From: Macrostomum lignano | Lineage: Eukaryota | NCBI GenBank assembly: GCA_002269645.1 | Contig: NIVC01000150.1 | Location: forward strand, 620,001 to 684,000 | Reading direction: 5' to 3' | Length of the DNA stretch: 64,000 bases | In this document: positions 1 to 56,839 of the stretch, in pieces | How positions within the stretch are numbered: the stretch's first letter is position 1 | Layout of the letters: every line of letters starts with the position of its first letter | The notes under the pieces: model-generated | Told to the model about the DNA's origin: nothing | Seen by the model: only the letters and a program-made list of their open reading frames with translations | Database searches by the model: none | Translations under genes and position numbers: made by a program

Positions 1-605
1 GTCAGTCAGTCAGTCAGTCACGTCAGTCAGTCAGTCAGTCAGTCAGTCAGTCAGTCAGTCAGTCAGTCAGTCAGTCAGTCACATCAGTCAGTCAGTCACA
101 TCAGTCAGTCAGTCACATCAGTCAGTCAGTCAGTCACGTCAGTCAGTCAGTCAGTCACATCAGTCAGTCAGTCACATCAGTCAGTCAGTCAGTCACATCA
201 GTCAGTCAGTCAGTCAGTCAGTCAGTCGGTCACATCAGTCAGTCAGTCACATCAGTCAGTCAGTCAGTCACGTCAGTCAGTCAGTCAGTCAGTCAGTCAG
301 TCAGTCAGTCAGTCAGTCAGTCAGTCAGTCAGTCAGTCACATCAGTCAGTCAGTCACATCAGTCAGTCAGTCAGTCACGTCAGTCAGTCAGTCAGTCAGT
401 CAGTCAGTCAGTCAGTCAGTCAGTCAGTCAGTCAGTCAGTCACATCAGTCAGTCAGTCACATCAGTCAGTCAGTCAGTCACGTCAGTCAGTCAGTCAGTC
501 AGTCAGTCAGTCAGTCAGTCAGTCACATCAGTCAGTCAGTCAGTCAGTCAGTCAGTCAGTCACATCAGTCAGTCAGTCAGTCAGTCAGTCACATCAGTTA
601 GTCAG
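1..605. repeat. (GTCA)n microsatellite with GTCACATCA interruptions, intronic
   Basis: Direct reading; ends just before the pyrimidine tract/acceptor at 638. Confidence 0.97.
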
Positions 606-638
606 TTAGCTAGTTACCTTGACCTTTCCTCTTTCCAG

Positions 639-12659: not shown

Positions 12660-14672
12660 TTACTTTTTAAATTTCTCAAACACCTGTCTAACCTGGTCAA
12701 ACACTCGATCGGGCTCAAGCTCGCCGTTGACTTTGAACACCAGGCCCGCCCGATCGTAGTGATCCAGTATTGGCATGGTGTCGCGAACAAACGATTGAAA
12801 CCGTTTGCGCAGTGTCGCCTCATTGTCGTCCAGGCGACCGCTGCCACGGCCGAGACAGCGACCAGCGCAGACGTCGTCAGAAGCGTCGATGAGCAGGACG
12901 CCGCGGACAATGGCTTTGGTTGACATCTGGCGATTCCAGCCGTCCAGGTTGTCCTTGTTGCGAGGGAATCCGTCTATGATGAAGTTTACCTGGAAAATGT
13001 TTAATCAGGCTAAATGCCGAGATTGTGAGATTTGATTCACGCATTGATATTTGATTCTAAGATGGTGAGATTTGATTCTTGATGGTGAGATTTGGTTCTG
13101 GTATTGTGAGATTTGATTCTGGATGGCGAGATTTGATTATGGGATTGTGAGATTTGATTCACGCATTGAGATTTGATTCTAAGATGGTGAGATTTGATTC
13201 TTGATGGTGAGATTTGGTTCTGGTATTGTGAGATTTGATTCTTGATGGTGAGATTTGGTTCTGGTATTGTGAGATTTGATTCTGGATGGCGAGATTTGAT
13301 TATGGGATTGTGAGATTTGATTCTGGTATTATAAGATTTGATTCTGGGATTGTGAAATTTTATTTTGGATGGTGAGATTTGGTTCTGGTATTATAAGATT
13401 TGATTTTGGGATTGTGAGATTTGATTCTGGGTTTGTGAGATTTGATTCTGGATGGTGAGATTTGGTTCTGGTATTATAAGATTTGATTTTGGGATTGTGA
13501 GATTTGATTCTGGGTTTGTGAGATTTGATTCTGGATGGTGAGATTTGGTTCTGATATTATAAGATTTGATTTTGGATGGCGAGATTTGATTCTGGGATTG
13601 TGAAATTTTATTTTGGATGGTGAGATTTGATTCTGGGATTGTGAGATTTGATTCTGGATTGTGAGATTTGATTCTGGATTGTGAGATTTGATTCTGGATT
13701 GTGATAATTGATTCTGAATGGCGAGATTTGATTCTGGGATTGTGAGATTTGATTCTGGCATTATAAGATTTGATTCTGGGATTGTGAAATTTTATTTTGG
13801 ATGGTGAGATTTGGTTCTGGTATTATAAGATTTGTTTCTGGGATTGTGAAATTTTATTTTGGATGGTGCGATTTGATTCTGGTATTATAAGATTTGATTC
13901 TGGGATTGCGAAATTTTATTTTGGATGGTGAGATTTGATTCTGGTATTATAAGATTTGATTCTGGGATTGCGAAATTTTATTTTGGATGGTGAGATTTGG
14001 TTCTGGTATTATAAGATTTGATTCTGGGATTGTGAAATTTTATTTTGGATGGTGAGATTTGGTTCTGGTATTATAAGATTTGATTCTGGGATTGTGAAAT
14101 TTTATTTTGGATGGTGAGATTTGGTTCTGGTATTATAAGATTTGATTCTGGGATTGTGAAATTTTATTTTGGATGGTGAGATTTGATTCCGGGATTGTGA
14201 GGTTTGATTCTGGACGGTGAGATTTGGTTCTGGATGGTGAGATTTGATCCTGGCATTATGAGATTTGATTCTGGATGGTGAGATGCGGAGACTTGATTAT
14301 GGATGGTTAGATTCTATTCGAGAGCAGTCTGAGTTAGTTTGAGCTTATTTTAATAACGCAAGATTTTATGCTAAGAAAACTAGATTAGTCCTGAGCCATA
14401 CACACCAGCCCCTTCTCCTGGTGAAGCGTGTCCATTCGCTTCTCCAACAGGCTGCAGGTGATTTCAACCGGCACAATCTGGCCGTCTCGCATTCTCTGGG
14501 CAATCATTTCGCCGTGCGGCGAGCCGGACTGGACTTCGATTCTGAGCAGCTCGCCAGCCGACATGTGTCCATAGCCGAACTCAGACACAATCCTGTCGCT
14601 CTGCGTGCCCTTGCCGCAGCCGGGCTTGCCCAGAATGAATACAACATTATAGGCTGGCGCATCGCCCGACAT
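12660..14672 (-). CDS. CMPK1: UMP-CMP kinase, 2 exons, about 198 aa
   Basis: complement(join(12660..12989,14406..14672)), phase 0. P-loop LGKPGCGKGTQ, HMSAGELLR, GQIVPVEIT, FIIDGFPRN, RLDDNEATLRKRF. Confidence 0.93.
13020..14300. repeat. ~21-22 bp minisatellite filling the CMPK1 intron
   Basis: GATTGTGAGATTTGATTCTGG variants with ~62-bp higher-order blocks. Confidence 0.95.
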
Positions 14673-21700: not shown

Positions 21701-22452
21701 TTGTGGCAGTTCAGCGTCCCTACCTGAAGCGTGCCATGTGGTACGGCTGGAGCTTGATATAGATGAGCCTCTGGGTCCCTAGCGCCACCCAGAAGATCCG
21801 TATGGGCCAGCGTGGCAGCAGCTCGGCGGGAAGAACCACGTCGCCGACCACGCTGATGCTCAACACGCCGACGCTCGCTCCGCTGCCCTCGCTTGATCCT
21901 GCCGGTGTTGGCCGCCGCAGCAGTTAAGCGCGGCTCACCGCACTGACCACTTGGAATTGAAGCGGCACTTACTTGCACCAATGTGTAAATCTATTTGCAC
22001 CTATAGGAAAAATCATCCTTTGCAGTAGCTAGCCTAAATCACAGTAAAATCCATTGTTATAAAGCTGTAATCTAAATATTTTATAAATGTTTTAGAATAC
22101 ATCAGCTAAACTCTCGAAATAAGGTACCTATGCTTTTCTTCATCCGGATTGTAAGCAAACAATCGAGCAGCTATACTTTATTAACTTTATGAAAAGGCGA
22201 GTAAAGATATCGTACATAATAACTTTTTTATCTGTCTTATCTTCTGACTGAAACATTTCGCAATAATTTTTAGAGACAAGAAGAAACTTTGCGCCAAAAA
22301 TTGAAGAAGTATTCATTCTTTATTTGTCGCAGCGAAGGGCTCCTAACGCACAAGAATCCACGAATAATGTTCATATCATAGATTGGTTCTATCAGAACCC
22401 ATTCACTAACTAAAGCGTCGCAATCTTGTGGTCTTTTAGAGTCGCATCACTT

Positions 22453-23541
22453 TCACTTGCTATCATCCTCGGGAGTTGGAGATGGGCGCGGCCTTCGTGG
22501 ACGGTTCTCCCTCTTGTCGTCATCCTCCTTAGGAGTTGGAGATGGACGCGGCCTTGGACGGTTCTCCCTCTTGTCGTCATCCTCCTCGGGAGTTGGAGAT
22601 GGACGCGGCCTTCGTGGACGATTCTCCCTCTTGTCGTCATCCTCCTCAGGAGTTGGAGATGGACGCGGCCTTCGTGGACGGTTCTCCCTCTTGTCGTCAT
22701 CCTCCTCAGGAGTTGGAGATGGACGCGGCCTTCGTGGACGATTCTCCCTCTTGTCGTCATCCTCCTCAGGAGTTGGAGATGGACGCGGCCTTCGTGGACG
22801 GTTCTCCCTCTTGTCGTCATCCTCAGGAGTTGGAGATGGACGCGGCCTTGGACGGTTCTCCCTCTTGTCGTCATCCTCCTCAGGAGTTGGAGATGGACGT
22901 GGCCTTGGACGGTTCTCTCTCTTGTCGTCATCCTCCTCAGGAGTTGGAGATGGACGCGGCCTTCGACGGTTCCCCCTCATGTCGTCATCCTCCTCAGGAG
23001 TTGGAGATGGGCGTGGCCTTCGACGGTTCTCTCTCTTGTCGTCGTCATCACTATCGTCCTCATCATCATCCTCCTCAGGAGTTGGAGATGGACGCGGCCT
23101 CGATGGACACGGCCTTGAATGACGGTTCTCCCTCTTGTCGTCGTCATTACTATCGTCCTCATCATCATCCTCCTCAGGAGTTGGGGATGAACGCGGCCTC
23201 GATGGACACGGCCTTGAATGACGGTTCTCTCTCTTGTCGTCGTCATCCTCCTCGGGAGTTAGAGATGGACGCGGCCTTGGACGGTTCTCCCTCTTGTCGT
23301 CATCCTCCTCGGGAGTTGGAGATGGCGGCGGCCTTGGTGGACGGTTCTCCCTCTTGTCTGCATCCTCCTCAGGAGTTGGAGATGGAGGAGGTCTTGGCAT
23401 CTGTAATTTTTCCGATTTTTCCTTGATTTTTGCACTCTGGTAAAGAGGGCTTCTCCAAAGTTATTGCATTTTAGAAACAGTCGAATTTCTTACCGCAGCA
23501 GCCACTGCAATTGTCACCAGAAGAAGCACAATCAACTTCAT
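22453..23541 (-). CDS. Secreted multi-repeat precursor with signal peptide and 13 KR dibasic sites, 331 aa
   Basis: complement(join(22453..23400,23494..23541)), phase 0; exon 1 = MKLIVLLLVTIAVAAA|gtaag; TATA box upstream; AATAAA at 22319-22324 (minus). Confidence 0.85.
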
Positions 23542-23615
23542 GTTGTCAGGAGTAAAGATTTGACCAGCTGTAATTTGACCAAACTCCAAAGATTTGGTTG
23601 ATTTCTGCTGGTACA

Positions 23616-23623
23616 TTTATATA
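23616..23623 (-). promoter_or_regulatory. TATA box (TATATAAA) of the secreted precursor gene
   Basis: 75 bp upstream of the ATG at 23541. Confidence 0.55.
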
Positions 23624-25509
23624 GACAGCCAGCTCCGATTTACTCCAGTGGTCTCACAATGCCTGTTTACTCAGACTGAAAGTCTTCGCTTTGTTTCCAC
23701 GCGCTGAAAATCTTTTGTTTGTCATTGTTTCCTTCTCTGCTTTATTTTTAAGAGAAACTGCTGTATCGTCAAAATCCAGATTATGAAAATAATTGCAACA
23801 AGTAAAACAATGACTTATTCTCTGAGACGAAGCTGTCAATGGATAAAATCCATTTTATTGTTTCGCTGAGACTTTGGGATATCATGTGGCTCTCGATGAA
23901 TAATAGACTTGAAAATAACAGAATAAGACTTAGCATAAGTCTCAGATATTCTTTCAGTTTGAGGACCAGGTGGAAGTTAAGAATTGTGTCAATAGAAGCT
24001 CATTTTCATTTATTCAACTCTGGTCTTTGGGAACAAAATGGATTTGATCGTCTATTCTTAGCCTCAACCCGAAGAAAGTTTGTGCCTGATCGATGTTTTC
24101 AGCTTAGGCTTACCAAAGAAAGTTTCAATGGTCACGTGGGTCATTTAAAATCAATCGTAGTCATCACAAGAAATGTGTGAAACGCGTTTGCATGTGACTG
24201 TATACTTTATGGGTCTTCGTAAAAAGTCCGGACCACTGTCAGCTAGACGAGCTCTCTAGCTGTCAAGTAGCATGCTCAAGCAATCACTAGCTACATATAG
24301 GAGGACTTCACCTGAAAAATAAGATCTTGATAATAAAATATTCTTTGTTCTCACCAATTGATTTTAAACGGTTAAATGGTTCTTTTCAGAAGTTTCCAAT
24401 ATTCGAGATCTGTAGATTAGCCACTGATAATCAATATATAGGACATAAATGTTATTAATATGTAATCAATACGGGGTGCCTTCCCATAGTCGAATTTTCC
24501 CGTCGAAAAGCAAGTCATTTCACAACGTCGAAAACTCTAGCAAGAGACTTCATAAGGTCGAAATTTCACATCAAAAATTTGAATAGCAGTCACTTTCACA
24601 AGGTCAAAGTTTCACAATTGCCGAAAACAGAGTATTCCACGTGCAATTTCAGCCTTATGAAGCCCCTTGCTAAAGTTTTCGATCTTGTGAAAGTGGCTGC
24701 TAATTCAAAATTGAGTTTTCGACCTTTTGAAGGAAGGTGCTTTTTGACGTGAGATTTCGAGTTTATGAAACCCCCATCAATAGACGTATTGGGATTCCTT
24801 GAAATCGATAGCGCGATGCTTTAGGGCGACAAAATAAGTGCTAACACCATCTATTCTCAAAATACATGTAGGAATTAAGTCATGTACTCGTACATGTAGA
24901 ATTTTTGGCTTTGTCTCCCCCCCCCCCTACCATAATCCACATGGCGACGCCCCTGTAGAAAGGTTACAGTTTTTAACTACAAGTAACTACGAGTTTCAGC
25001 TGAAGCAAAGTACTCTTATACTCGTACAATACGAGTATACTGTATATGGTGCACTTTTTCCAAGGCTTTTTCACGGGCTTTTTAGGTTCGTCTCGAAGAA
25101 ACTTCAAGTTCAGTTATAATTCATCATAATTGTCTCTTTCGGGTCTGCATGCTTTCATACATTATACATTAGCAGCTGTTTTATCACTTTTTGAGTAAAG
25201 AAAAAAAGCGTCTGTAAGAGCATTCATTAGCTTTTATCTATTATCTGGTCTTTCTCTGTTTATTCGAGACTGCTAGCTGCTGCCTACATGAACAGAAAGT
25301 GGAAAATTATTTTTTTCGCCTAGAGTCTGGCCAATTTAATCCCTAAAATGTTTAAGAAGCACAGTATACCCGGTATCTTTTGAATCACTGTGGAGTTTTT
25401 CATGTTCCTGAGGTAATGATTGAACTAAAAATAGCAAATAAATGGTGCCGAGTCCTCGTATCGTTTAGGTAGTGGACTGCCAATCAGCGAGGCCTAACAC
25501 TCGCCAATT

Positions 25510-25923
25510 TCACTTCGTCGGCTTCTTCTCGGCCATCTTCATGCGTTTGGCTGATGACTTCTTGGTTGCTCGGCTGCGCTTCCTGCCAGTGGCCTTGGAA
25601 GCGGAGCGTTTCCTGCCGGTGCCCCTGGAAGCAGAGCGTTTCCTGCCGGTGCCCCTGGAAGCAGAGCGTTTCCTGCCGGTGCCCCTGGAAGCAGAGCGTT
25701 TCCTGCCGGTGCCCCTTGAAGCAGAGCGTTTCCTGCCGGTGCCCCTTGAAGCAGAGCGTTTCCTGCCGGTGCTCCTGGAAGCAGAGCGTTTCCTGCCGGT
25801 GCTCCTTGAGGCGGAGCGTTTCCTCTTGGCTGGACGGCCCCGCTGGAGCTGAGCTGGAGCATCCGTTGCCATCTTCTCCGACTGGCTCGATGAGGCGGCA
25901 GGGGATTGTGAACGCGACCGCAT
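25510..25923 (-). CDS. Protamine-like / SNBP-like Arg-Lys-Ser-rich protein, 137 aa, intronless
   Basis: ATG 25923: MRSRSQSP..., about 9 copies of 9-aa RKRSASR(G/S)TG (27 bp), ending KKSSAKRMKMAEKKPTK*. Unique basic sequence flanks the repeat. Confidence 0.65.
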   Translation of the reverse strand: MRSRSQSPAASSSQSEKMATDAPAQLQRGRPAKRKRSASRSTGRKRSASRSTGRKRSASRGTGRKRSASRGTGRKRSASRGTGRKRSASRGTGRKRSASRGTGRKRSASKATGRKRSRATKKSSAKRMKMAEKKPTK

Positions 25924-26955
25924 GCTGGCAGTTAAAGGCCTCAGCTGTATAAATTTGCTTGATTTATTTGTTCTTAAGCGAGTTAAGCGCGCTAGGACTT
26001 TAAATTGGCTATTCAAGCTCTTTTGAAAGACCTGTTCCGAACTAGGAGGAGTGAAATTAAATTTATAGTCTATGTCCACAAAATAGACTATGATACAGCT
26101 TTTTTGTTTAGAAAATTGAATTTCTATAGTCTTTAATTTTTAGTATACGAGTCGTATCTTGAATCGTAAGTTGGGAGAGTTGAGAATTCAGTCATTAGCT
26201 AGTAATTAGTCTTTTAATTTAAGTCTTTCACAACTAACGCGTTCACTCTTGAACAATATCGAGACACGCTTGCTGAATATACTACTTACTGTTACTTTTA
26301 GCAACAGCGTTTTTCTCTTTGACTTCCTCTTCTAAGTAGCTATTGATATTTTCATTGTATTTTTTGTTTTCCATTATTATTCTCTCTGGTCCTACAAAGG
26401 GTAAGCGGGCTGTCTTTCGTTCCCTGATAGTTCCTTCAGTGAAGTTCCTCAAGGATGTTCATTATAATTGTATCCATCCTGGTAATTACGAGGGTCTTCC
26501 CAAAATTCTTTGTGCTGGCTTGTAACTTTTACACTGAAACCGCGCACAAACCTGATTGTCTCAAAGTTCGGCCATTTGATTGTCCAACAGTGCATCATGT
26601 CCTGTGTAAATATTTTGCTTTCAATTGCAACTTTTCCTATTCTTTTATTTTTCGAAAGACAGACAAGAGCGCGGATTTCACCTGTTAAGAAAGTCAACAG
26701 TCAACCAACAATTGTATAGCCAGTGCAATCAGTTGGAACCGGACCTGCAGGTAGCCTTTCTTCTTCGTCAAAAGCTGCACAAATTTGGTAAGCTGTGTAA
26801 ACTGACGCGAAGTTTTATTCAAATTTCTAAACAATGCCTTGTCGGGAAGTTCGGAAGTCTATTTTTGAAGACAGCATGCACTTGATTGGCCCAAAACCAA
26901 AAAAGTTAAACGTGATTCTGTTTCGTCGCACTGATCCAGTAATCTAAGCAACAGA

Positions 26956-27259
26956 ATGAGACTGGTACTGCTTCTGCTGCTGTCAGAGTGGCTCTAACTG
27001 CTGCGGTAAGTATGCAAATTGTTCAATAAGGTCTTGAGTGTAGCGTGTTTAAAGAAATTCAGAATATCCAACTACGCTCGTATTTGGATTCCGATTCCCA
27101 GCTACCATACAGACGCCAGATGATTAGGTCTGAGCATCGCGGAGACGGGCAGCATCATCCGAAATCAACGCATGACGATAGTGAAGATGACGGCCGCGGC
27201 GGCGAGGGTCCTAGACCGAGTCCAAATGAGGACGAAGAAGAAAAAGTCAGTGATTGTAC

Positions 27260-27290
<31 letters not shown>

Positions 27291-27344
27291 GACGACATAA
27301 ACCAACAGACAGAAGACAGACGACAGAAGACACATGCGTCATAA
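26956..27344 (+). pseudogene. Paralog of the 22-23 kb secreted precursor; 1-nt deficit in the signal-peptide exon, 3' end abuts a LINE
   Basis: Exon 1 26956..27005 (50 nt; MRLVLLLLL / VRVALTAA|gtaagt in two frames); exon 2 from acceptor 27102: LPYRRQ...GPRPSPNEDEEEK...poly-D. Confidence 0.6.
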
Positions 27345-28808
27345 ACCGCGTGCTTGCCGGTGCCTCCGCACCCACCGAGTGGATCGTCGCGAACATCGTG
27401 CCGATCCCAAAGAAGGCAGGGACAGCGCGGAAAGAAGACCACCGCGGGATCTCACTGATGTCCTGCACCGCGAAGCTCTTCAACCGGCTGCTGCTCGATG
27501 TCTGCAGTCGGTGCTGGACCCGTACCTGCGGTACGAGCAGAAGGGATTCCGGCCGCAACGCGGTACAGTGACACAGATCCTCGCACTCCGCCGTGTCATC
27601 GAGGAGGCGCGCATCCGCCAGTCTACGCTGATCATCGTCTTCGTTGACTCTCGAAAGGTATTTGACTCGGTGTTGAGAGCCGCGCTTCCCTTTGTTCTTC
27701 GAGCCTACCGGGTACCCCAGCAGCTAGTAGACGCAGTCATGGCGCTGTATCGCGATACTCGAGCTGCTGTGGTGACGGCGGACGGCCTGTCTGACCTGTT
27801 CGATACTTCATCAGGAGTTCTGCAGGGCGACATGCTAGCGCCGTTCCTCTTCGTGCTGCTACTGGACTGGGTGCTTCGGACCGCACTCCCCTCGGCTAAT
27901 GACGGCTTCCTGCTGCGCAGACGCATCGGTCGCCGCCACGGCGAAAAGCGCCTTATTATTTTTTGCTTGGCTACGCCGACAACCTCGCCCTCCTGTCCTC
28001 GTCCGTTGAAGGCGCCCAGCGCCAGATCCACAGGCTGGTCGAAGTGGCATCGAGCGTCGGTCTGATCGTCAACACGCTGAAGACCGAGGTGCTGACTGTG
28101 CCGGCCGACATCCCAGTGGACCTGACGTGCCGCGGCGCAGACGGGCAGACGACCAGGCTCGCACGCTGCCAGCGGTTCACCTACCTCGGCGGTCTGGTGC
28201 CCCACGTGGAAGAAGACCTCTGACGGCGCAGAGGACTTGCCTGGGCGGCCTTTCGTTCGATCCGAGCCGTCCTCCAGTCCGAAGCGCTGCCCGACCGCCA
28301 GAGGGCTCGGCTGTGGCAGGCGGTGGTCGAAACCGTCCTGCTCTACAACGCCGAGACGTGGACGCTGACGGCTACGCTGGAGCGGAAGCTGGACTCGGCG
28401 CACTCAGGGCTGCTCCGTGCGGCCTTTCGAGCTGACGAGAGCGCCGGGACCGAGGCCCTGTACGATCGGGCCAAGCTGCAGCGCCCGTCCACCATCCTGC
28501 GCCGGCGGCAACTTCAACTGGCGGGCCACACGTGATCCGGGCCGAGGGCTACTGCCCCCAAAACCTGTTCAGGACGTCCTGCTGCTCACTCTGCAGCTGG
28601 CCCGCTCAGGCGGGGTCAGGCCAAAACCCATCGATACGTGGACTGTCTCCTACGCGACGCCAGGGCGCCCGACACTGCCAACAGGGCGGACTTCGTCCGC
28701 TCTCAGGCTCTGCGGCGCGCCATCTGACGCACCCTGCTCTGTGACTGCTTGCGGGGCTGCGTAATTTGTTGTTGTTGTTGTTGTTGTTTTTGTTGTTGTT
28801 GTTGTTGG
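27335..28808 (+). mobile_element. 5'-truncated, inactivated RTE-type non-LTR retrotransposon
   Basis: RT motifs IVPIPKK, RGISLMS, EQKGFRP, TQILALRRVIEE, GVLQGDMLAPFLF, GYADNLALL, FTYLG spread over several frames; TGA at 28221; (GTT)n tail 28765-28808. Confidence 0.93.
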
Positions 28809-29126
28809 TAATAATAATTTCGGATACTAGCTAACTAACTTGTTTGGATGCTACGGTACGCGGTATGTCATGCACTCATGCTCAAGCTACGATGTTATTT
28901 TTTGAAACCGACTAATTAGATAGTTTCAACCTGCAATGATCTGATCGAGATAAAATTTACAATTTAAATTAACTCAAATTAAACGAAATTATCGCAAATC
29001 GTTTTTATTTATTCAAATCAATTTCATATGTTCAATGAGTCGACAACAAAAAGACAAAGCGACCTTATGACTGAGTAAGTTATTGCTGGGGTGTCGATGG
29101 AATTCCAGCTTATCGGTTGTTTTATT

Positions 29127-30221
29127 CTACTTAGCTTTTGCCTGCTTTTGTTCTTTTTCGCGTTGTTTCCTTTCCTCTTTCACCCGCTTTATTTCGTCTT
29201 CGCGTCGTTTTTTTTCCTCTTTCGCCTGTTTTTTCGCCAGCTTTTTTGCTTCCTTTTTAGCCATCTTCTCTTGCTTTTTCTTTATCTTCTCATTCTTCTT
29301 GGCTAGCTTCTTTTCTAACTTAGCTTGCTTTTCGGCCTCCTTTTTTCGTTGCTTCTCTTCTTTTTTCTGTTTTACTTCCTCTGGGGTAGGGGTGCGCAGT
29401 ATTCTCATTTGGTTTGCTTCCACCTTCAGGTCAGTTCCATCATCATCTTTAGTATCATACATGTACTCGTACTCTTTATGAGGAGGAGTTGGAGGAGTAT
29501 CATCTTCTTTACTATCTAGAATTTCATCGTCCTCGTCTTCATCATAATCTTCATCATCATCGTCAGCGGGCTGAATGACAGTTCTGGTATTCTCAGTTTC
29601 AGCCTGGTCCTTATCCTCAATCTTCTTGGCTGCTTGCTCTAGCTCTTCAGTCTTCTTGTTGACTTCTTTGTCTTGATCCTCAGTCTCGGATTCTTTGTCT
29701 TCCTCGTCTTGATCCTCAGTCTCGGATTCTTTGTCCTCCTCATCTTGATCCTCAGTCTCGTTGGCTTCTTTTTCATCTTTGCCTTGATCCTCAGTCTTGT
29801 TGGCTTCTTTTTCATCTTTGCCTTGATCCTCAGTCTTGTTGGCTTCTTTGTCGTCTTTGTCTTGATCCTCAGTCTCGTTGGCTTCTTTGTCGTCTTTGTC
29901 TTGATCCTCAGTCTCGTTGGCTTCTTTGTCGTCTTTGTCTTGATCCTCAGTCTCGTTGGCTTCTTTGTCGTCTTTGTCTTGATCCTCAGTCTCGTTGGCT
30001 TCTTTGTCGTCTTTGTCTTGATCCTCAGTCTCGTTGGCTTCTTTGTCGTCTTTGTTTTGATCCTCAGTCTTGTTGGATTCTTCGTCTTGATTCTCAGTTT
30101 CTTGCTTGTCTGCTTGGTCTTGATATCCAGTTGCTGCGTCGGTTTCGTCTTTGGCTTCGCCTTCAGCCTGCTGGTCAACGGGCTTCTCGTCGGTGCCAAC
30201 TTTGAGAGTGTTTTCCGACAT
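29127..30221 (-). CDS. Orphan 364-aa intronless protein: acidic 13-aa repeats followed by a Lys/Glu-rich coiled coil
   Basis: GCCATG context, upstream acceptor-like ttccctttcag, AATAAA near 29005 (minus); 39-bp repeat ETEDQDKDDKEAN; unique N- and C-terminal sequence stays open. Confidence 0.75.
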   Translation of the reverse strand: MSENTLKVGTDEKPVDQQAEGEAKDETDAATGYQDQADKQETENQDEESNKTEDQNKDDKEANETEDQDKDDKEANETEDQDKDDKEANETEDQDKDDKEANETEDQDKDDKEANETEDQDKDDKEANKTEDQGKDEKEANKTEDQGKDEKEANETEDQDEEDKESETEDQDEEDKESETEDQDKEVNKKTEELEQAAKKIEDKDQAETENTRTVIQPADDDDEDYDEDEDDEILDSKEDDTPPTPPHKEYEYMYDTKDDDGTDLKVEANQMRILRTPTPEEVKQKKEEKQRKKEAEKQAKLEKKLAKKNEKIKKKQEKMAKKEAKKLAKKQAKEEKKRREDEIKRVKEERKQREKEQKQAKAK

Positions 30222-39990: not shown

Positions 39991-42900
39991 TCAAATGTCA
40001 GACTGGAACAGCAGTCTGATTGTGGGCGGAGTAGCCAGCGGTGTTGAGCAGAACGGACACAGCGGCCTGAGCTGGCTGGCCGTGAGTAGCGGCAGCGCAG
40101 ACCAATACTTCACTGTGAGCTCCGAGGCCATATGACCGCACGGGTTAAACGCATAATTTGGCATCCCGTCTCTGTCCAAATAGAGCGCCGCCTCTTCTCC
40201 TAGGCGTAGGGCAATAAAAGCAGATTGTTGCAGACACAGCGGACAGGTTCGCCTGTCCGGCTGCTGCTGTCCGCCGGGCCTGTCCCAGCTGTGCAGGCCG
40301 TGCACGTGGCCGCAGCCGGTGTACACGTACGGCTGCCGATCGTCTGGCATCGAGCCGCCGCCGCCTGCGGCTGAGGCGGGATTCGCTTGCAGGGGCTTCC
40401 GGATCACCAGAGTCTGGTAGCGGACCGGACACAGGATGTGCGTCTGGTTGAGCGATTCAACTCGCGAGCAGAGCTCCAACAGGGTGGGACTGCGCCGCAG
40501 ACCCTCAGCGGAGCGGTACACCAGGCAGACTCCGCACAGGTCGATGACCGTGCCGTCAATCAGCGAGTTGTCAACCGCGTGCAGCACGTCCGAATGCGAC
40601 GGGGTGGCCCGGTGCTCACGCATGGGGTAAAGCCGGCCCTCGATGCTCACCTCGAACCAGGGGCCCGGCTGGCTGCCAGGGCAGTAGCCGCCCACCGGCT
40701 TGTTGATGAGGACGCCGTTGGTTGTCAGGCCGTCAACTTCGTCAGTTGTCACGTTCCAGCGGATAGCGTGCTCACCTGCGCGAGTGGAGGGACAGGGGAC
40801 GAGTGCTGTGAGCCAGTCTGCTTACATTTAGGCATAGCAAATAAGCAAATTTAAGCAAATTTAAAATAGACTAAAAGGCGATCCCTAGAAATGGTATATC
40901 AGGACCGATTCTTTAAAATGCAGCTTCAGAAAGCGATTCTTAGAAATTAGGGTTCCAGAGGGCAATTCTTAGAAATGGGGGTTCCAAAGGGCGATTCTTA
41001 GAAATTTGGCTTTAGAAGGTGATTCTTAGAAATGGGGTTCCACAGGGCGATTTTTAGACATGGGGTTCCAGAAGGCGACTCTTAGAAATGGGGTTTCAGA
41101 GGGCGATTCTTAGAAATGGGGTTCAAGGGGGCGATTCTTAGAAATGGGGTTCAAGGGGGCGATTCTTAGAGATGGGGTTCAAGGGGGCGATTCTTAGAAA
41201 TGGGGTTCTAAAGGGCGATTCTTAGAAATGGGGTTCCAAAGGGCGATTCTTAGAAATGGGGTTCCAAAGGGCGATTCTTAGAAATTTGGCTTTAGAAGGT
41301 GATTCTTAGAAATGGGGTTACACAGGGCGATTTTTAGTCATGGGGTTCCAGAAGGCGACTCTTAGAAATGGGGTTTCAGAGGGCGATTCTTAGAAAAGGG
41401 GTTCCAGAAGGCGATTCTTAGAAATGCGTTTACAGAAGGCGATTCTTAGAAATGCGGCTTTAGAAGGCGATTTTTAGAAATGGGGTCCTAGAGGGTGACT
41501 CTTAAAAATTGGTTGTAAGAAGAAATTAAATTAAGCGAAGATAATTAGAAACGGTCTGGTCACAGGGTGCTTCCGTAACTTTTTTACGCGAGTGGCGTTG
41601 GCAGCATAAAAAAAATTTAATAAAAGCACTAGCAGACTCACCCAGCATGATCCGCTTATTCGAGTCAAATCCCGCCGCAAATATCCTGGGTGTGTAGGGC
41701 GGCGTCCGGTTGACAATGATGCGGCAGGCGTACCGGCTGATGGTGGAGTCTGGGGCAGCTGACTCGCCTGGCGGGGTGGAGTCGCTCACCACCAGGTCAA
41801 TCACTGACTCGGTGGACCGGCCCACCTGCGCGGGGAGAAATTTTCATATTTTTAATACGCATCGGGCATTGACCCAAATGGAAACTTCAATTTCAATTTC
41901 AACATTCTTGAACTACTCAGATCATTGGACAGTCACATCCTTGAGCATATACATCCTATGGCATTAAATAATGATAATATTAATAATAATTGATTACACC
42001 AGCCCTAATGGGCAGATGTACAGCCGACAGATCAGCCGCAGCTGAAGGCTGCGTACGGCTGTTCAGTCCAAGGACTGGGGAGTCGCCACACACGCCCTCA
42101 ATTACCCCAGCTAATGCTGGCACCCATTTTACAGCTGGGTGACTTAAAGCAATGTAGAGCTGAGTGTCTTGCTCAAGGACAAATTGTTCCGAGTGGATCG
42201 GGAATCGAACTACCCAACTTTTTAGTCGCGAGTCTGACGCTCTGACCACTAGACTGCACCCTATGGGCATTTAAGTTCCTTAATATTCACATCCATGGGT
42301 ATTCACATCCATGGGTATTCACATCTATGGGTATTCACATCCGTGGGTATTCACATCCATGGGTATTCACATCTATGGGTATTCACATCCATGGGTATTC
42401 ACATCCATGGGTATTCACATCCTTGGGTATTCACATCCATGGGTATTCACATCCTTAGGTATTCGCATCCATAAGTATTCGCATCCTTAGTATTCACATT
42501 CTTAGGTATTCACATCCTTAAATATTCACATCCATGAGTATTTACATCCGTGGGTATTCACATCCATGGGTATTCACATCCATGGGTATTCACATCCGTG
42601 GGTATTCACATCCATGGGTATTCACATCCATGGGTATTCACATCCATGGGTATTCACATCCATGGGTATTCACATCCATGGGTATTCACATCCATGGGTA
42701 TTCACATCCATGGGTATTCACATCCTTAGGTATTCGCATCCATAAGTATTCGCATCCTTAGTATTCACATTCTTAGGTATTCACATCCTTAAATATTTAC
42801 ATCCGTGGGTATTCACATCCATGGGTATTCACATCCATGGGTATTCACATCCGTGGGTATTCACATCCATGGGTATTCACATCCATGGGTATTCACATCC

Positions 42901-43732
42901 ATGGGTATTCACATCCATGGGTATTCACATCCATTGGTATTCACATCCATTGGTATTCACATCCATGGGTATTCACATCCATAAGTATTCGCATCCTTAG
43001 TATTCACATTCTTAGGTATTCACATCCTTAAATATTCACATCCATGAGTATTTACATCCGTGGGTATTCACATCCTTGGGTATTCACATCCTTGGGTATT
43101 CACATCCTTGGGTATTCACATCCTTGGGTATTCACATCCTTGGGTATTCACATCCTTGGGTATTCACATCCTTGGGTATTCACATCCTTGGGTATTCACA
43201 TCCTTGAACATTGACATGACATCCTAAAACTTAAACCAGCCAACAAGAGCCCAAACACCAGCAATATCATCACCTGGAACATATCGCACTGAGCATCCGG
43301 TTCGTATTCCACAACCACAAAGCCCTGATTCCGGCCAAGCGTATAGGACACAGACGCCTGAGGCCTGCAGCCCTCCAGCTCCTTGATGCTGGTGGCGCGC
43401 CACTGCTTCTTCGTTGGCCGCAACGCGTTGCCGCCATTCGGCCGACGACGAAGCAGCAGACGGGACGTCCGTCGGCCGGCACCGCTGTCGCCTGGCAGAT
43501 GGCCGTTGCAACCGAGCACCACCAGCATGCCATATATGTCGCTCTCTGAGCTGCCGCTGACGCCGCTGCCGGCAGCATTGCCGCTGTGATTGCCGCTGTG
43601 ATTGCCGCCGCTTGGCAGCGGGACTGCTACAGTCGGCTGCTGCTGAGGTGGCTGCTGCTGAGGTGGCGGCGGCGTTGACGGCGGAGGCGATGGCGCCGAT
43701 GCAGATTGAGCCGGGTGCTGAACTGCGCTCAT
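39991..43732 (-). CDS. PELI: E3 ubiquitin ligase Pellino, 3 exons, 475 aa
   Basis: complement(join(39991..40775,41642..41825,43274..43732)); YGMLVVLGCNG, DMFQ|VGRSTE, STISRYACRI, IFAAGFDSNKRIMLGE, DGLTTNGVLI, DGTVIDLCG, CGHVHG, CPLC, FNPCGHM, CPFC. Confidence 0.96.
40925..41510. repeat. ~28-bp minisatellite in Pellino intron 2
   Basis: GGCGATTCTTAGAAATGGGGTTCCAGAA. Confidence 0.92.
41980..42261 (-). mobile_element. tRNA-derived SINE with CORE-like central domain in Pellino intron 1
   Basis: Minus strand: A-box-like CTAGTGGTCAGAG, B-box GTTCGATTCC, then CCTTGAGCAAGACACT...CAGCTGTAAAATGGG (resembles recalled MIR CORE), (ATT)n tail. Confidence 0.82.
42285..43205. repeat. 16-bp minisatellite in Pellino intron 1
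   Basis: GGGTATTCACATCCAT. Confidence 0.96.
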
Positions 43733-49391: not shown

Positions 49392-50153
49392 ATGCTACCT
49401 AGAACTAGAACTAGTTCATTATCTCGGCCGGCTTGCGGCTCTCGCAGTCACAGCACTAGCAGCAGCGCATCTGCAGCCAATGTCACCGGCGATCGGGAGC
49501 TGCTGTGGAGCAGAATTCGCGACACGGACAGCCTGCAGAGCCTGCTAGCGGCTATTGAGGCGGCCGGCTTCCACCCGCTAGTGCTGCCGCGGGCCAGCCT
49601 GCTCAGGAAAGACGCCGCTGATGACGTAGATTTCGGCGCCATCCTCGGCCAGCTGGGCATCTTCGGCGCCATCCTCGACTGCAAGTCAGTCGCCGACTCT
49701 GTTCAGCGAGAGCTAACCCGCCTAGAGCTGAATCTGATCAAGCTGGGCGTAACCAAGATCAGCATTAACTTGCTGTGCCGGCATCTCGAGGTAGCCAAAA
49801 ATGTCGGCAAAGCCTTCTGCCTGGTCATCGACGACCGCGCGCCGCCTGCCACCACGGCTAAGTCGGTGTTCGAAACCATGGAAGCCTCCCGACATCTCGG
49901 CCTGGTGAACGGCGGACGCCTGCCCGCCATCATTTTTGGCGGCGGCGGCGAGAGCGATACGCTGACGCGAATCGAGGACCGCGACGTCGACGCCGCCTCG
50001 TCGGCTTCGTCTGGCGACGAGCAATCGCTGCAGTCGGACTCTGCTGGCGCTGCATCCGGTGAGCCGCTGGAGATGCAGCACAAGCTGTGCCGCTTCACCG
50101 ACCTGATGCTCGTGGCCTACGAGAACAGCTGCGGTCGGGCGCAAGCCGTTTGA
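49392..50153 (+). CDS. Uncharacterised intronless 253-aa protein
   Basis: Non-repetitive ORF with the same GC3-rich codon style as the confirmed genes, in AT-rich flanks; true start uncertain; no family recognised. Confidence 0.7.
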   Translation: MLPRTRTSSLSRPACGSRSHSTSSSASAANVTGDRELLWSRIRDTDSLQSLLAAIEAAGFHPLVLPRASLLRKDAADDVDFGAILGQLGIFGAILDCKSVADSVQRELTRLELNLIKLGVTKISINLLCRHLEVAKNVGKAFCLVIDDRAPPATTAKSVFETMEASRHLGLVNGGRLPAIIFGGGGESDTLTRIEDRDVDAASSASSGDEQSLQSDSAGAASGEPLEMQHKLCRFTDLMLVAYENSCGRAQAV

Positions 50154-56100: not shown

Positions 56101-56839
56101 CTGGCGCGGTGGTGATTGGCCGCCGCTGCCGCGGAGACGGTTTTCAGCACCTCGTTGCAGTCAACATCGGCCACGGTGAACTCCTTGATGTCGGCCAGTC
56201 GGACAAACATATCGTTGTTGTTGCCGTTGCCGCTGTCCGACTGATAAATGCGCAGAGTGTCCGGCGACATGATGGTGCGCAACACGCCTTCCGGACCTGG
56301 CTGCTGGCTGTCAACTAGCTCCAGCTTCACCGGCTGGCCAATCAGGTAGCGGGTGGCCACGTGGACAAAGGACGGATTGGTCATGATGCCCTGGATATTG
56401 TCCAGCTGGGGCTGCTGCCCGGCACCGCCGGCCTGCTCGGAGATGTTTTTTGGTTAAAAATATGATTTATGCTGATTGGCAAGATTGTTTGATTGACAGC
56501 ATAAATAGGGAATAATTATGTGATAGTGATAGATGAATGATTTAAACAAACAACAACAGACCTGGCCAAATGCGGGCGGAGCGCCGCCGTGGCCCGCGTT
56601 GCCACCGCCGCGACTGTAAGAAGTCAGGCCCTTCCCATAGACGGGGCGGCTAAAAAAGTCATAAATTGCGAATCAAACGGCAGTCAAGACAATGGTTGCA
56701 AAATTGTGAATAAATTCAACCATTCTTGAATAAGTGGACACCCTTCGGCTTACTTAAGATTGTTTTGTCCTGCAGGACGATTGCGAGAAGATGTACCGCG
56801 ACTGTTACGCTGCTGCTGCATGCTCTGACCAGAGGGCAT
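53180..56839 (-). CDS. ATXN2: Ataxin-2 homolog, 4 exons, about 1004 aa
   Basis: complement(join(53180..55405,55818..56432,56562..56649,56754..56839))=3015 nt. Lsm domain, FVTDEGI, LsmAD (FDPHEMFKRNE...REERATQLAREIE...DEEMRYSAVHR), PAM2 LNVFAEEFVP, Q/P/A-rich tail. Confidence 0.93.
55480..55670. repeat. ~19-bp minisatellite in ATXN2 intron 3
   Basis: GGGCGATTCTGTGGGAGA. Confidence 0.88.

What the first reader, a model, noticed from the sequence alone, without database searches (positions are those of the whole stretch)
22453..23541. Secreted precursor predicted to release about 15 Pro/Arg-rich peptides at KR sites (apidaecin/drosocin-like architecture)
Seen: a separate 48-nt exon encodes signal peptide MKLIVLLLVTIAVAAA, spliced in phase to 15 units of ENRP(R)RPRPSPTPEEDDD separated by 13 KR and one MR; two longer variants contain a Cys; TATA box and AATAAA are present. 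Known: KR is the prohormone-convertase site; insect proline-rich antimicrobial peptides (apidaecin, drosocin) come from precursors with acidic pro-segments and carry PRP motifs, and drosocin is O-glycosylated on a Thr. No Gly amidation signal, so these are not typical amidated neuropeptides. Inference: an undescribed gland-secreted peptide family (antimicrobial, mucus/adhesive or seminal fluid); each unit is a cationic head plus acidic tail, possibly activated by tail trimming.
Basis: partly seen in the sequence, partly recalled or inferred. Interest (0 to 1): 0.75.

Follow-up and report, generated by a model that had tools for sequence, protein, structure and literature searches.

The report
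Flatworm secreted acidic-basic repeat protein gene
This is a real two-exon gene of the flatworm Macrostomum lignano (not an insect) that encodes a secreted, unstructured protein of 15 proline/arginine/acid repeats with a Lys-Arg at nearly every junction; it may be cut into about 14 small peptides, but those would be acidic, so it does not qualify as an apidaecin/drosocin-type antimicrobial.

Summary
The sequence observation is confirmed in full. On the minus strand there is a 48-nt signal-peptide exon (23541-23494), a 93-nt GT..AG intron and a 948-nt exon (23400-22453). Together they give a 331-aa product with 15 units of 18/19/20/33 aa, joined by 13 KR and 1 MR.

It is more than a chance ORF in a minisatellite:
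- All unit lengths are multiples of 3.
- The signal-peptide-like mini-exon is the only one in 128 kb.
- An RNA-seq-based public annotation calls a gene on the same strand with the same stop codon.

The window is Macrostomum lignano assembly Mlig_3_7, contig NIVC01000150.1, so the insect framing is wrong.

No homolog was found in Pfam, in PDB sequences, among 1.84 billion representative proteins or in metagenomes. It is a lineage-restricted orphan.

The mature protein is a disordered, blocky polyampholyte (24% Pro, 56% charged, pI 5.0, no aromatic residues). KR cleavage would release peptides that are nearly all net-anionic (13 of 14 at -1 to -9, one neutral), with no site that removes the acidic tail. 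P4 is Asp, so the sites are not furin sites. The defining apidaecin and drosocin features fail.

Best reading (about 0.45): a polyprotein processed by a PC2/PC1-type convertase into acidic, probably O-glycosylated peptides. Main rival (about 0.35): secreted intact as gland or granule material. Interest is moderate to low.

The parts
23616..23623 (-). TATATAAA, a TATA-box-like element. Its last A is the A of an upstream in-frame ATG (23616-23614), which the public annotation uses as the CDS start.
   Evidence: Read directly. The ORF 23461..23616 starts MYQQKS.... The called gene at L001 1057..2220 equals window 23616..22453. Function as a promoter element was not tested.
23494..23541 (-). Exon 1 coding part: the signal peptide MKLIVLLLVTIAVAAA (n-region MK, 14-residue hydrophobic core, Ala at -3 and -1).
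   Evidence: It is the only signal-peptide-like mini-exon with a GTAAG/GTGAG donor in both strands of the 64-kb window.
23401..23493 (-). Intron 1, 93 nt, GTAAGA...AAAATTACAG, phase 0.
   Evidence: GT..AG boundaries are also used by the neighbouring UMP-CMP kinase gene, whose intron was solved against its annotated protein. No RNA reads were available here.
22453..23400 (-). Exon 2 coding part, including the TGA stop at 22455-22453. It encodes the 315 aa that are the whole mature protein.
   Evidence: It has the same end as the gene called in GCA_002269645.1.
22456..23400 (-). Tandem array of 15 coding units. u1 23400-23350, u2 23349-23290, u3 23289-23230, u4 23229-23131, u5 23130-23032 (u4 and u5 are the two 99-nt Cys-containing units), u6 23031-22975, u7 22974-22918, u8 22917-22861, u9 22860-22807, u10-u13 22806-22567 (four 60-nt units with identical protein sequence), u14 22566-22510, u15 22509-22456.
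   Evidence: TRF periods 57/60/99 and the codon alignment of the units. u10-u13 alternate AAC/AAT synonymous codons, which suggests a recent duplication of a 120-nt double unit (inference).
22319..22324 (-). AATAAA polyadenylation signal, about 128 nt downstream of the stop codon.
   Evidence: Read directly. Use of the signal was not tested.
26956..27344 (+). Probable decayed paralog ('gene B'). Exon 1 is 26956-27005 (50 nt, signal-peptide-like MRLVLLLLLSEWL, then an in-frame TAA). The intron ends at ...ATACAG. Exon 2 is 27113-27344 and encodes ...GEGPRPSPNEDEEEKVSDCTDDDDDDDDDEDD..., running into a truncated LINE reverse-transcriptase fragment.
   Evidence: It shares the 13-mer CTGCTGCGGTAAG at the exon 1/intron junction with the main gene: 2 matches in the window against 0.04 expected. 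Alignment, sequence, tblastn PRPSPNEDEEE match. The segment 26730-27765 is missing from the homeologous contig.

Best explanation
This is a lineage-restricted gene of the flatworm Macrostomum lignano, transcribed according to the public annotation.

Its product enters the secretory pathway through a classical 16-residue signal peptide. The rest is a 315-residue intrinsically disordered tandem repeat. Each unit has a Pro-protected basic block (NRP(R)RPRP), a PSPTP linker that is a near-ideal mucin-type O-glycosylation site, an acidic block (EEDDD), and a Lys-Arg.

The most likely mechanism has three steps:
1. In a regulated-secretion cell, a PC2/PC1-type prohormone convertase cuts after each KR. 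KR is the only dibasic motif in the protein that is not followed by Pro.
2. A carboxypeptidase E/D-type enzyme removes the KR.
3. The cell releases about 14 peptides from one precursor. Most are 16-18 residues, such as ENRPRRPRPSPTPEEDDD in four identical copies. Two are 31 residues and contain Cys, and one is a 36-residue fusion across the MR junction.

These peptides are net acidic and probably O-glycosylated. They would act as secreted signalling or gland peptides, not as cationic antimicrobials.

Shown: the gene structure, the signal peptide, the repeats, the charge pattern and the orphan status. Inferred: cleavage, trimming, glycosylation, cell type and function.
For: Structure and coding:
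- Gene structure and phase.
- Unit lengths are all multiples of 3, with an excess of third-position changes.
- The signal-peptide mini-exon is unique in 128 kb.
- A gene is called on the same strand with the same stop codon in GCA_002269645.1. That annotation is built from RNA-seq (StringTie/TACO plus TransDecoder; PMC5730564).

Cleavage-site logic:
- 13 KR motifs are all followed by Glu.
- The other dibasic motifs are RR followed by Pro (7) or by Arg then Pro (2).
- 39 of the 65 Arg are followed directly by Pro.
- KR followed by Glu is a bona fide prohormone-convertase site, for example the ACTH/beta-lipotropin junction of POMC (own knowledge).

The enzyme exists in this species: M. lignano has a PC2 homolog (RNA815_2403.2), expressed in the nervous system and essential for development (PMC4490696).

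Composition: 24% Pro, 56% charged residues, net charge per residue -0.05, pI 4.99, no aromatic residues. Charge blockiness is 0.197 against 0.084 +/- 0.015 in shuffles. No folded-domain family matches.
Against: - There is no direct evidence of cleavage.
- The 13 KR sites are copies of one ancestral unit, not 13 independent observations.
- One junction has drifted to MR/G without being purged.
- P4 is Asp, so ubiquitous furin-type enzymes would not cut. Processing therefore needs co-expression with a PC2/PC1-type enzyme. PC2 is reported as neural in this species, and the tissue of this gene is unknown.
- There is no amidation Gly, no similarity to known flatworm neuropeptide families, and no ortholog with which to test conservation of the sites.
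- A 37-kDa blocky polyampholyte is equally plausible as an intact secretory material.
- The annotated CDS starts at an upstream ATG, which would give an atypical 41-residue leader.
Confidence: 0.45

Rival explanations
1. The protein is secreted intact. It would be a disordered, O-glycosylated, blocky polyampholyte that serves as gland or granule material: a mucus, rhabdite, cement, prostate or adhesive-organ secretion, or a granin-like granule-matrix or coacervate protein. On this reading KR is just part of the alternating charge pattern.
For: - Strong, nearly neutral polyampholyte with segregated charge blocks, 24% Pro and no hydrophobic residues.
- PSPTP in every unit fits mucin-type O-glycosylation preferences (own knowledge).
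- P4 is Asp, so constitutive furin would not cut (sequence).
- M. lignano gland cells express many novel secreted proteins without homologs: 76 prostate-limited transcripts, 38 of the 65 with a predictable ORF carrying a signal peptide (PMC5977470).
- The neighbouring genes also carry in-frame coding minisatellites, so repeat expansion of coding sequence is common at this locus.
Against: - The only dibasic motif that is not Pro-protected sits exactly at each unit boundary.
- S+T content is about 12%, low for a mucin.
- It resembles no known flatworm adhesive protein: Mlig-ap1 and Mlig-ap2 are huge, Cys-rich and domain-containing (PMC6410801).
- The motif is absent from the supplements of the prostate screen and of the adhesion paper.
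Confidence: 0.35
2. One reading: a polyprotein precursor of proline-rich antimicrobial peptides (apidaecin/drosocin-like). The cationic PRP-containing head would be the active part and the acidic tail a removable pro-segment.
For: - RPRP/PRP motifs and a PSPTP segment reminiscent of the O-glycosylated PRPT of drosocin (sequence; PMC10449632 abstract).
- The polyprotein layout of signal peptide plus repeats plus basic processing sites resembles the apidaecin pre-pro-polyproteins (PMC11549390).
Against: - The predicted peptides are net -1 to -9, with one neutral, against +3 to +6 for active apidaecin-type peptides.
- There is no PRPPHPRL pharmacophore and no free C-terminal Leu.
- There is no RR-EAEPEAEP spacer. 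The N-terminal Glu-Asn is not a substrate for X-Pro/X-Ala dipeptidyl aminopeptidase.
- No Tyr, Leu or Ile anchor residues are present.
- No cleavage site separates head and tail. Acidic C-termini are poor substrates for the usual secretory carboxypeptidases (own knowledge).
- Apidaecin-like genes were found only in bees and wasps, whereas this is a flatworm.
- No sequence homology was found.
Confidence: 0.07
3. It is not a functional protein-coding gene. It would be a transcribed minisatellite whose open frame and upstream hydrophobic ORF are fortuitous, in a genome where about 15% is simple or tandem repeats.
For: - The window contains 81 TRF rows.
- Several other frames on both strands are also open across much of the array.
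- No homolog exists anywhere.
- The codon-position bias is not significant alone.
- The annotated product length (316 aa) does not match the simple two-exon model.
Against: - Only the proposed frame stays open through all 15 units, including the irregular ones.
- All length variants are multiples of 3.
- The unique in-phase signal-peptide exon has canonical splice sites.
- The stop codon follows directly after the array, with AATAAA 128 nt later.
- An RNA-seq-derived gene model lies on the same strand with the same stop.
- A decayed paralog with the same exon 1/intron junction shows that the two-exon layout has been duplicated as a unit.
Confidence: 0.08

Closest known systems
Multi-copy prohormone / neuropeptide precursors processed by PC2/PC1 and carboxypeptidase E (for example FMRFamide-type and planarian/flatworm npp prohormones)
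   Same: N-terminal signal peptide; many tandem copies of a short peptide bounded by KR; acidic residues next to the sites; a PC2 homolog exists in the same species (PMC4490696).
   Different: No amidation Gly; the 'spacer' and the 'peptide' are not separated by any site; the peptides are unusually acidic and Pro-rich; no similarity to any known family; neural expression is unknown.
Apidaecin pre-pro-polyproteins (type II proline-rich antimicrobial peptides of bees and wasps)
   Same: Signal peptide followed by tandem Pro/Arg-rich units separated by basic processing sites (PMC11549390).
   Different: No RR-EAEPEAEP spacer; no PRPPHPRL C-terminus; net charge negative instead of +3 to +6; flatworm rather than Hymenoptera; no homology.
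Drosocin / Baramicin polypeptide immune genes of Drosophila
   Same: One gene gives several secreted peptides by cleavage at basic sites; a Pro-flanked Thr could be O-glycosylated, as in drosocin (abstracts of PMC9233930, PMC8423362 and PMC10449632).
   Different: Those precursors use furin-type sites, which by own knowledge need Arg at P4 (R-X-K/R-R). Here P4 is Asp. The products here are anionic. There is no homology.
Yeast alpha-factor and fungal Kex2-processed repeat proteins (own knowledge)
   Same: Signal peptide plus tandem short units, each ending in KR, giving many copies of one small secreted peptide.
   Different: Those are fungal, use N-terminal Glu-Ala/X-Ala dipeptide trimming, and are unrelated in sequence. 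This is an analogy only.
Granins (chromogranin/secretogranin-type granule matrix proteins; own knowledge)
   Same: Acidic (pI about 5), Pro-rich, disordered, heat-stable-type composition with multiple dibasic sites; secreted by the regulated pathway; partly processed into peptides.
   Different: Granins are not perfect tandem repeats and are vertebrate families with conserved termini. No homology was detected.

Membership tests
[quoted passage not shown] | Pre-pro-polyprotein: signal peptide plus tandem peptide repeats separated by processing signals | tested here: met
   Signal peptide plus 15 units with 13 KR junctions. Family layout as described in PMC11549390.
[quoted passage not shown] | Spacer resembling RR-EAEPEAEP (dibasic site plus X-Pro/X-Ala dipeptides) | tested here: not met
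   The junction is DDDKR|ENR. There are no EA/EP dipeptide runs.
[quoted passage not shown] | Conserved C-terminal pharmacophore PRPPHPRL with penultimate Arg and a free C-terminal Leu | tested here: not met
   After KR removal every unit but the last ends in an acidic run (...EDAD...E(E)DDD); the last ends ...EDDS. The mature protein has a single Leu.
[quoted passage not shown] | Net positive charge (+3 to +6 in tested peptides) | tested here: not met
   Predicted peptides are net -1 to -9, with one at 0; pI 4.1-5.0 (6.3 for the last unit).
[quoted passage not shown] | Detectable homology / taxonomic range (found only in bees and wasps) | tested here: not met
   The organism is Macrostomum lignano. 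No homolog in the HMMER searches.
Drosocin-like O-glycosylated proline-rich antimicrobial peptides | Cationic PRP-containing peptide released at a furin-type site with Arg at P4 (R-X-K/R-R; site rule from own knowledge) | tested here: not met
   P4 is Asp at every KR site and the peptides are anionic. PMC9233930 reports furin cleavage for the Drosocin precursor (abstract and term counts only).
Drosocin-like O-glycosylated proline-rich antimicrobial peptides | O-glycosylated Thr in a Pro-rich context | not testable with these tools
   PSPTP is present in 13 of 15 units (the variants are PSLTP and SSPTP). Glycosylation itself needs mass spectrometry or lectin work.
PC2/PC1-processed multi-copy prohormones | Signal peptide and repeated peptides flanked by accessible dibasic sites | tested here: met
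   13 KR followed by Glu; every other dibasic motif is followed by Pro or by Arg-Pro.
PC2/PC1-processed multi-copy prohormones | C-terminal Gly for amidation (common, not obligatory) | tested here: not met
   No Gly precedes any KR. There is one Gly in the whole mature protein.
PC2/PC1-processed multi-copy prohormones | Expression in convertase-positive (neural/neuroendocrine) cells and detection of the mature peptides | not testable with these tools
   No expression or peptidomic data could be linked to this locus. PC2 exists in the species (PMC4490696).
Mucin-like secreted tandem-repeat glycoproteins | Signal peptide and tandem repeats dominated by Pro/Thr/Ser | tested here: inconclusive
   Pro is 24%, but S+T is only about 12% (23 S and 16 T in the full sequence) and 56% of residues are charged. 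The best database look-alike, P0101, is a mucin-like repeat that matches on composition only.
Flatworm duo-gland adhesive proteins (Mlig-ap1 / Mlig-ap2) | Very large (5,407 and 14,794 aa), Cys-rich, with carbohydrate- and protein-binding domains and Lys/Arg repeats | tested here: not met
   331 aa, 2 Cys, no Pfam domain. Family description in PMC6410801.

The most novel reading that the evidence does not exclude
The KR-released, poly-acidic, probably O-glycosylated peptides could be the still unidentified 'small negatively charged molecule' that M. lignano's releasing glands are proposed to secrete. That molecule is thought to mask the Lys/Arg repeats of the cohesive protein Mlig-ap1 and so trigger detachment in the duo-gland temporary-adhesion system. 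It was unidentified in 2019 and still described as unknown in 2022 (PMC6410801; PMC9229212).

Nothing here places the gene in the tail or in releasing glands. Releasing vesicles were reported as PAS-positive with low protein density, which argues against a peptide cargo. This reading is only not excluded.
Probability: 0.03. Interest if true: 0.8.

Novelty: new member of a known kind. Interest (0 to 1): 0.35.

Why it matters
If the KR processing is real, one small orphan gene would supply about 14 copies of an unusual zwitterionic, Pro-rich, acidic peptide. The animal offers RNAi, in situ hybridisation, transgenesis and behavioural, adhesion and mating assays, so a function could be assigned quickly.

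It would also be a clear example of a secreted peptide family built by expanding a coding minisatellite in a genome that is about 15% tandem repeats.

If the protein is secreted intact, it is one more lineage-specific gland protein of modest general interest.

The practical correction for the scan is twofold. The window is a flatworm, not an insect. And a 'PRP motif plus KR' pattern is not enough to call a proline-rich antimicrobial peptide, because net charge and the C-terminal pharmacophore must also be checked.

Tried and rejected
1. Homology searches for the precursor all came back empty or gave composition look-alikes only:
   - Word-indexed search of 5.8 billion proteins: none at E<=1e-3. 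The 8000-candidate list was probably swamped by low-complexity words.
   - Full HMMER scan of 1.84 billion representatives: 11 weak hits, all unrelated periodic repeats.
   - Pfam and PDB sequences.
   - Metagenome contigs by protein and by a 44-nt degenerate DNA pattern.
   - Literature search for the peptide motifs.

2. Exact-protein look-ups. The 315-aa exon-2 ORF is not on record.

3. I tried to recover the annotated 316-aa product in order to get its locus tag. I enumerated one- and two-intron GT-AG models and the deletion of two identical units. Eleven candidates were tested and none is in the collection. This was a dead end, so no expression data could be linked to the gene.

4. I looked for a second copy of the gene:
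   - The homeologous contig (L002) starts about 640 nt short of where the counterpart would lie.
   - The neighbouring 137-aa protein is not on record.

5. The motif is absent from the supplements of the prostate (seminal-fluid) screen and of the adhesion paper. McVeigh 2009, the flatworm neuropeptide paper, is not held.

6. Rfam and tRNA scans of the window found nothing.

7. Insect origin is rejected. Pellino gave only 48% identity to insects. The kinase exon then matched an M. lignano protein at 98%, and the fetched contig is identical to the window.

8. I did not run a structure prediction. With 24% Pro, 56% charged residues, no aromatics and no alignment available, a low-confidence model was the only possible outcome.
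Full report
**1. What is in the sequence**

- An ATG at 23541 opens 16 codons, MKLIVLLLVTIAVAAA, that end at 23494 directly before GTAAGA.
- 93 nt further on, AAAATTACAG ends at 23401.
- The next base starts a 315-codon ORF (23400-22453, TGA at 22455-22453).
- The junction is in phase 0. The spliced CDS is 996 nt and encodes 331 aa.
- Splitting at [KM]R gives 15 units: one of 17 aa after the signal peptide, then units of 18, 19 or 20 aa, and two of 33 aa that each contain a Cys. There are 13 KR junctions and one MR junction.
- Tandem Repeats Finder reports periods of 57, 60 and 99 nt.
- TATATAAA lies at 23623-23616 and AATAAA at 22324-22319.

**2. Is it more than a chance ORF in a minisatellite?**

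The question is fair. The window has 81 tandem-repeat rows, and other frames on both strands are also open over much of the array. Four things argue for a real coding gene.

1. Unit lengths are 51/54/57/60/99 nt, so every indel is a multiple of three. Only the proposed frame runs through all the irregular units.
2. In a codon alignment of the units, the minimum number of changes is 7/10/16 at codon positions 1/2/3, with 11 synonymous codon variants. The direction is right, but the bias is weak on its own.
3. I scanned both strands for a mini-exon with an ATG, a basic N-terminus, a hydrophobic core, small residues at -3/-1 and a GTAAG/GTGAG donor. It returned exactly one hit in 128 kb, this one, in phase with the repeat ORF.
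4. An independent, RNA-seq-derived annotation calls a gene here (section 3).

**3. Where the window comes from**

Conserved exons show a metazoan genome: Pellino, an aldo-keto reductase, UMP-CMP kinase, an ataxin-2-like gene with polyQ, and a LINE reverse transcriptase.

Pellino reached only 48% identity to insect proteins. The kinase exon, however, is 98% identical to 'hypothetical protein BOX15_Mlig027059g1 [Macrostomum lignano]'.

I fetched the contig around that protein. This gave L001 from GCA_002269645.1, contig NIVC01000150.1, which is base-for-base the reverse complement of window 2660-24672. By arithmetic, the window corresponds to about 620,001-684,000 of that contig. The organism is therefore a free-living marine flatworm, not an insect.

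In that assembly a gene is called at L001 1057..2220, which is window 23616..22453, on the same strand and with the same stop codon. It has no Pfam hit and a 316-aa product.

The Mlig_3_7 annotation is a genome-guided transcriptome (StringTie/TACO plus mapped de novo transcripts, with TransDecoder ORFs) (PMC5730564). The call is therefore indirect evidence of transcription.

Two discrepancies remain.

- The annotated CDS begins at an in-frame ATG 25 codons upstream (MYQQKSTKSLEFGQITAGQIFTPDN-MKLIV...), and its A is the last base of the 'TATA box'.
- 316 aa implies 213 nt of introns. That equals the 93-nt intron plus 120 nt, which is two 60-nt units. Units 10-13 alternate AAC/AAT synonymous codons as if a 120-nt double unit had duplicated. 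The extra 'intron' is most simply a read-mapping junction from an allele with two fewer units (inference).

I could not recover the exact annotated sequence.

**4. Relatives**

None were found.

- Pfam: no family, even at E=1.
- Word-indexed search of 5.8 billion proteins: nothing.
- Full HMMER scan of 1.84 billion cluster representatives: 11 weak hits. On inspection they are unrelated periodic low-complexity proteins, such as a mucin-like RPKPSPTPGNTTNTTHKTTI repeat.
- PDB sequences: nothing.
- Metagenome contigs, by protein and by DNA pattern: nothing.
- No paper in the library contains the motifs.

The homeologous contig (L002) is collinear with window 24257-30124 from its very first base. 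A counterpart of the gene, if present, lies just outside the fetched DNA.

Inside the window there is one probable decayed paralog on the plus strand.

- Its 50-nt signal-peptide-like exon (26956-27005) shares the junction 13-mer CTGCTGCGGTAAG with the main gene: 2 matches against 0.04 expected.
- That exon carries an in-frame TAA.
- Its second exon (27113-27344) encodes ...PRPSPNEDEEE... followed by poly-Asp and abuts a truncated LINE.
- This segment is deleted in the homeolog.

The family looks young and is turning over.

**5. What the protein is like** (all)

- The mature protein has 315 aa and a mass of 37.4 kDa.
- It is 24% Pro, with 80 basic and 97 acidic residues: fraction charged 0.56, net charge per residue -0.05, pI 4.99.
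- It has no aromatic residues, three aliphatic residues (L/I/V/M), two Cys and one Gly.
- Charges are strongly segregated: blockiness 0.197 against 0.084 +/- 0.015 in 500 shuffles, maximum 0.123.
- This is an intrinsically disordered, blocky polyampholyte.
- Each unit reads [E-N-R-P-(R)-R-P-R-P] [S-P-T-P] [E-E-D-D-D] [K-R].
- Of the 65 Arg, 39 are followed directly by Pro.
- The dibasic motifs are KR followed by Glu (13), RR followed by Pro (7) and RR followed by Arg then Pro (2). The unit boundary is therefore the only dibasic site that is not Pro-protected.

**6. Mechanism**

KR followed by an acidic residue is a classical PC1/PC2 site (own knowledge, for example the POMC ACTH/beta-LPH junction). 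M. lignano has a PC2 homolog that is neural and essential (PMC4490696).

P4 is Asp at every site, so furin-type enzymes, which need Arg at P4, should not cut (established specificity, own knowledge). Processing therefore depends on the cell type.

If the sites are cut and the KR is trimmed, the products are:
- four identical copies of ENRPRRPRPSPTPEEDDD (2163 Da);
- nine single-copy variants of 15-18 residues or, for the two Cys-containing ones, 31 residues;
- one 36-residue fusion across the MR junction.

Thirteen of the 14 are net -1 to -9 (pI 4.1-5.0) and the last unit is neutral.

PSPTP is a near-ideal mucin-type O-glycosylation context (own knowledge), and the N-terminal Glu could cyclise. 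Both points are inference.

I rate 'processed polyprotein giving acidic peptides' at about 0.45 and 'secreted intact as gland or granule material' at about 0.35. Sequence alone cannot separate the two.

**7.

Apidaecin-type peptides are encoded as pre-pro-polyproteins with RR-EAEPEAEP spacers. They carry a conserved PRPPHPRL C-terminus whose penultimate Arg and C-terminal Leu contact the release factor and the tRNA. Their net charge is +3 to +6, and they were found only in bees and wasps (PMC11549390).

Here only the polyprotein layout is shared. Spacer, pharmacophore, charge, taxon and homology all fail.

Drosocin and Baramicin products are released at furin cleavage sites (PMC9233930 and PMC8423362, from abstracts and term counts; not read in detail). 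Nothing separates the cationic head from the acidic tail in this protein. 'Activation by tail trimming' would need an unknown enzyme. I give the antimicrobial reading about 0.07.

**8. A speculative link worth recording**

The M. lignano temporary-adhesion model postulates an unidentified small negatively charged molecule from the releasing glands. It is thought to mask the Lys/Arg repeats of Mlig-ap1 (PMC6410801), and it was still described as unknown in 2022 (PMC9229212).

Poly-acidic, glycosylated peptides made 14 at a time would fit the charge requirement. However, releasing vesicles were reported as PAS-positive and protein-poor, and nothing places this gene in the tail. I put this at about 0.03.

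**9. Verdict**

- The gene is real (about 0.9) and uncharacterised.
- The organism and the antimicrobial analogy were wrong.
- The processing hypothesis is reasonable but unproven.
- It is a new, lineage-restricted member of the general class of secreted tandem-repeat/dibasic polyproteins.
- Interest is 0.35.

Noticed in passing
window 26956-27344 (+): Probable pseudogene paralog of the repeat gene. It has a 50-nt signal-peptide-like exon with an in-frame TAA and the same CTGCTGCGGTAAG exon/intron junction. Its second exon has one PRPSPNEDEEE unit plus poly-Asp and is cut off by a LINE fragment. The segment is absent from the homeologous contig.
   Followed up: partly
window 27334-28800 (+): 5'-truncated non-LTR retrotransposon fragment (RVT_1 domain, E=3.6e-12). 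A shorter copy sits at the same place in the homeolog L002 (2868 onwards).
   Followed up: partly
window 25510-25923 (-): Neighbouring ORF with an in-frame 30-nt coding minisatellite (GRKRSASRGT, about 8 copies) and an AT-hook-like RGRPAKRKR. The homeolog has a called 137-aa gene at the matching place (L002 1308-1841). The exact window product is not on record.
   Followed up: partly
window 29127-30221 (-): 364-aa ORF with an in-frame 39-nt coding minisatellite (KDDKEANETEDQD, about 11 copies) and a Lys/Glu-rich C-terminus. It has no signal peptide and no Pfam hit. Three adjacent genes therefore carry coding minisatellites with periods that are multiples of 3.
   Followed up: no
window 8080-30124 versus L002: The two homeologous contigs are rearranged. 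In L002 the block matching window 24257-30124 is followed, after about 4 kb, by the kinase/aldo-keto-reductase block in inverted orientation. The segment carrying Urm1 and the repeat gene does not lie between them. This could be an inversion or an assembly difference.
   Followed up: partly
window 39991-43732 (-): A Pellino E3 ligase gene (FHA and RING domains) whose introns are filled with 28-nt and 16-nt minisatellites. No M. lignano Pellino protein appeared in the protein search (best hit 48%, insects), so it may be missing from, or mis-modelled in, the public annotation.
   Followed up: no
window 12663-14672 (-): UMP-CMP kinase gene. Its single 1416-nt intron consists almost entirely of a 41/62-nt minisatellite (13021-14284).
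   Followed up: yes
window 53180-56384 (-): Ataxin-2-like gene (LSm-like N-terminus, LsmAD-like segment, PAM2-like NVFAEEFVP) with very long polyQ, polyA and polyP tracts. The assignment is from reading the sequence; Pfam gave no hit for the N-terminal exon.
   Followed up: no
window 23568-23616 (-): The annotated CDS start (ATG at 23616-23614) overlaps the TATA-like element. An acceptor-like AAATTACAG ends at 23568, 27 nt before the MKLIV ATG, and could be a spliced-leader trans-splice site. About 39% of M. lignano genes are trans-spliced (PMC5730564).
   Followed up: no
window 1-606 and throughout: A 600-bp (GTCA)n microsatellite lies at the window start, and there are dozens of 16-80-nt minisatellite arrays of 0.4-1.3 kb. 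This is consistent with the reported 15% simple/tandem-repeat content of this genome.
   Followed up: no
window 49392-50153 (+): 253-aa ATG-initiated ORF with ordinary, non-repetitive composition and no Pfam match. It may be an exon of an unannotated gene.
   Followed up: no
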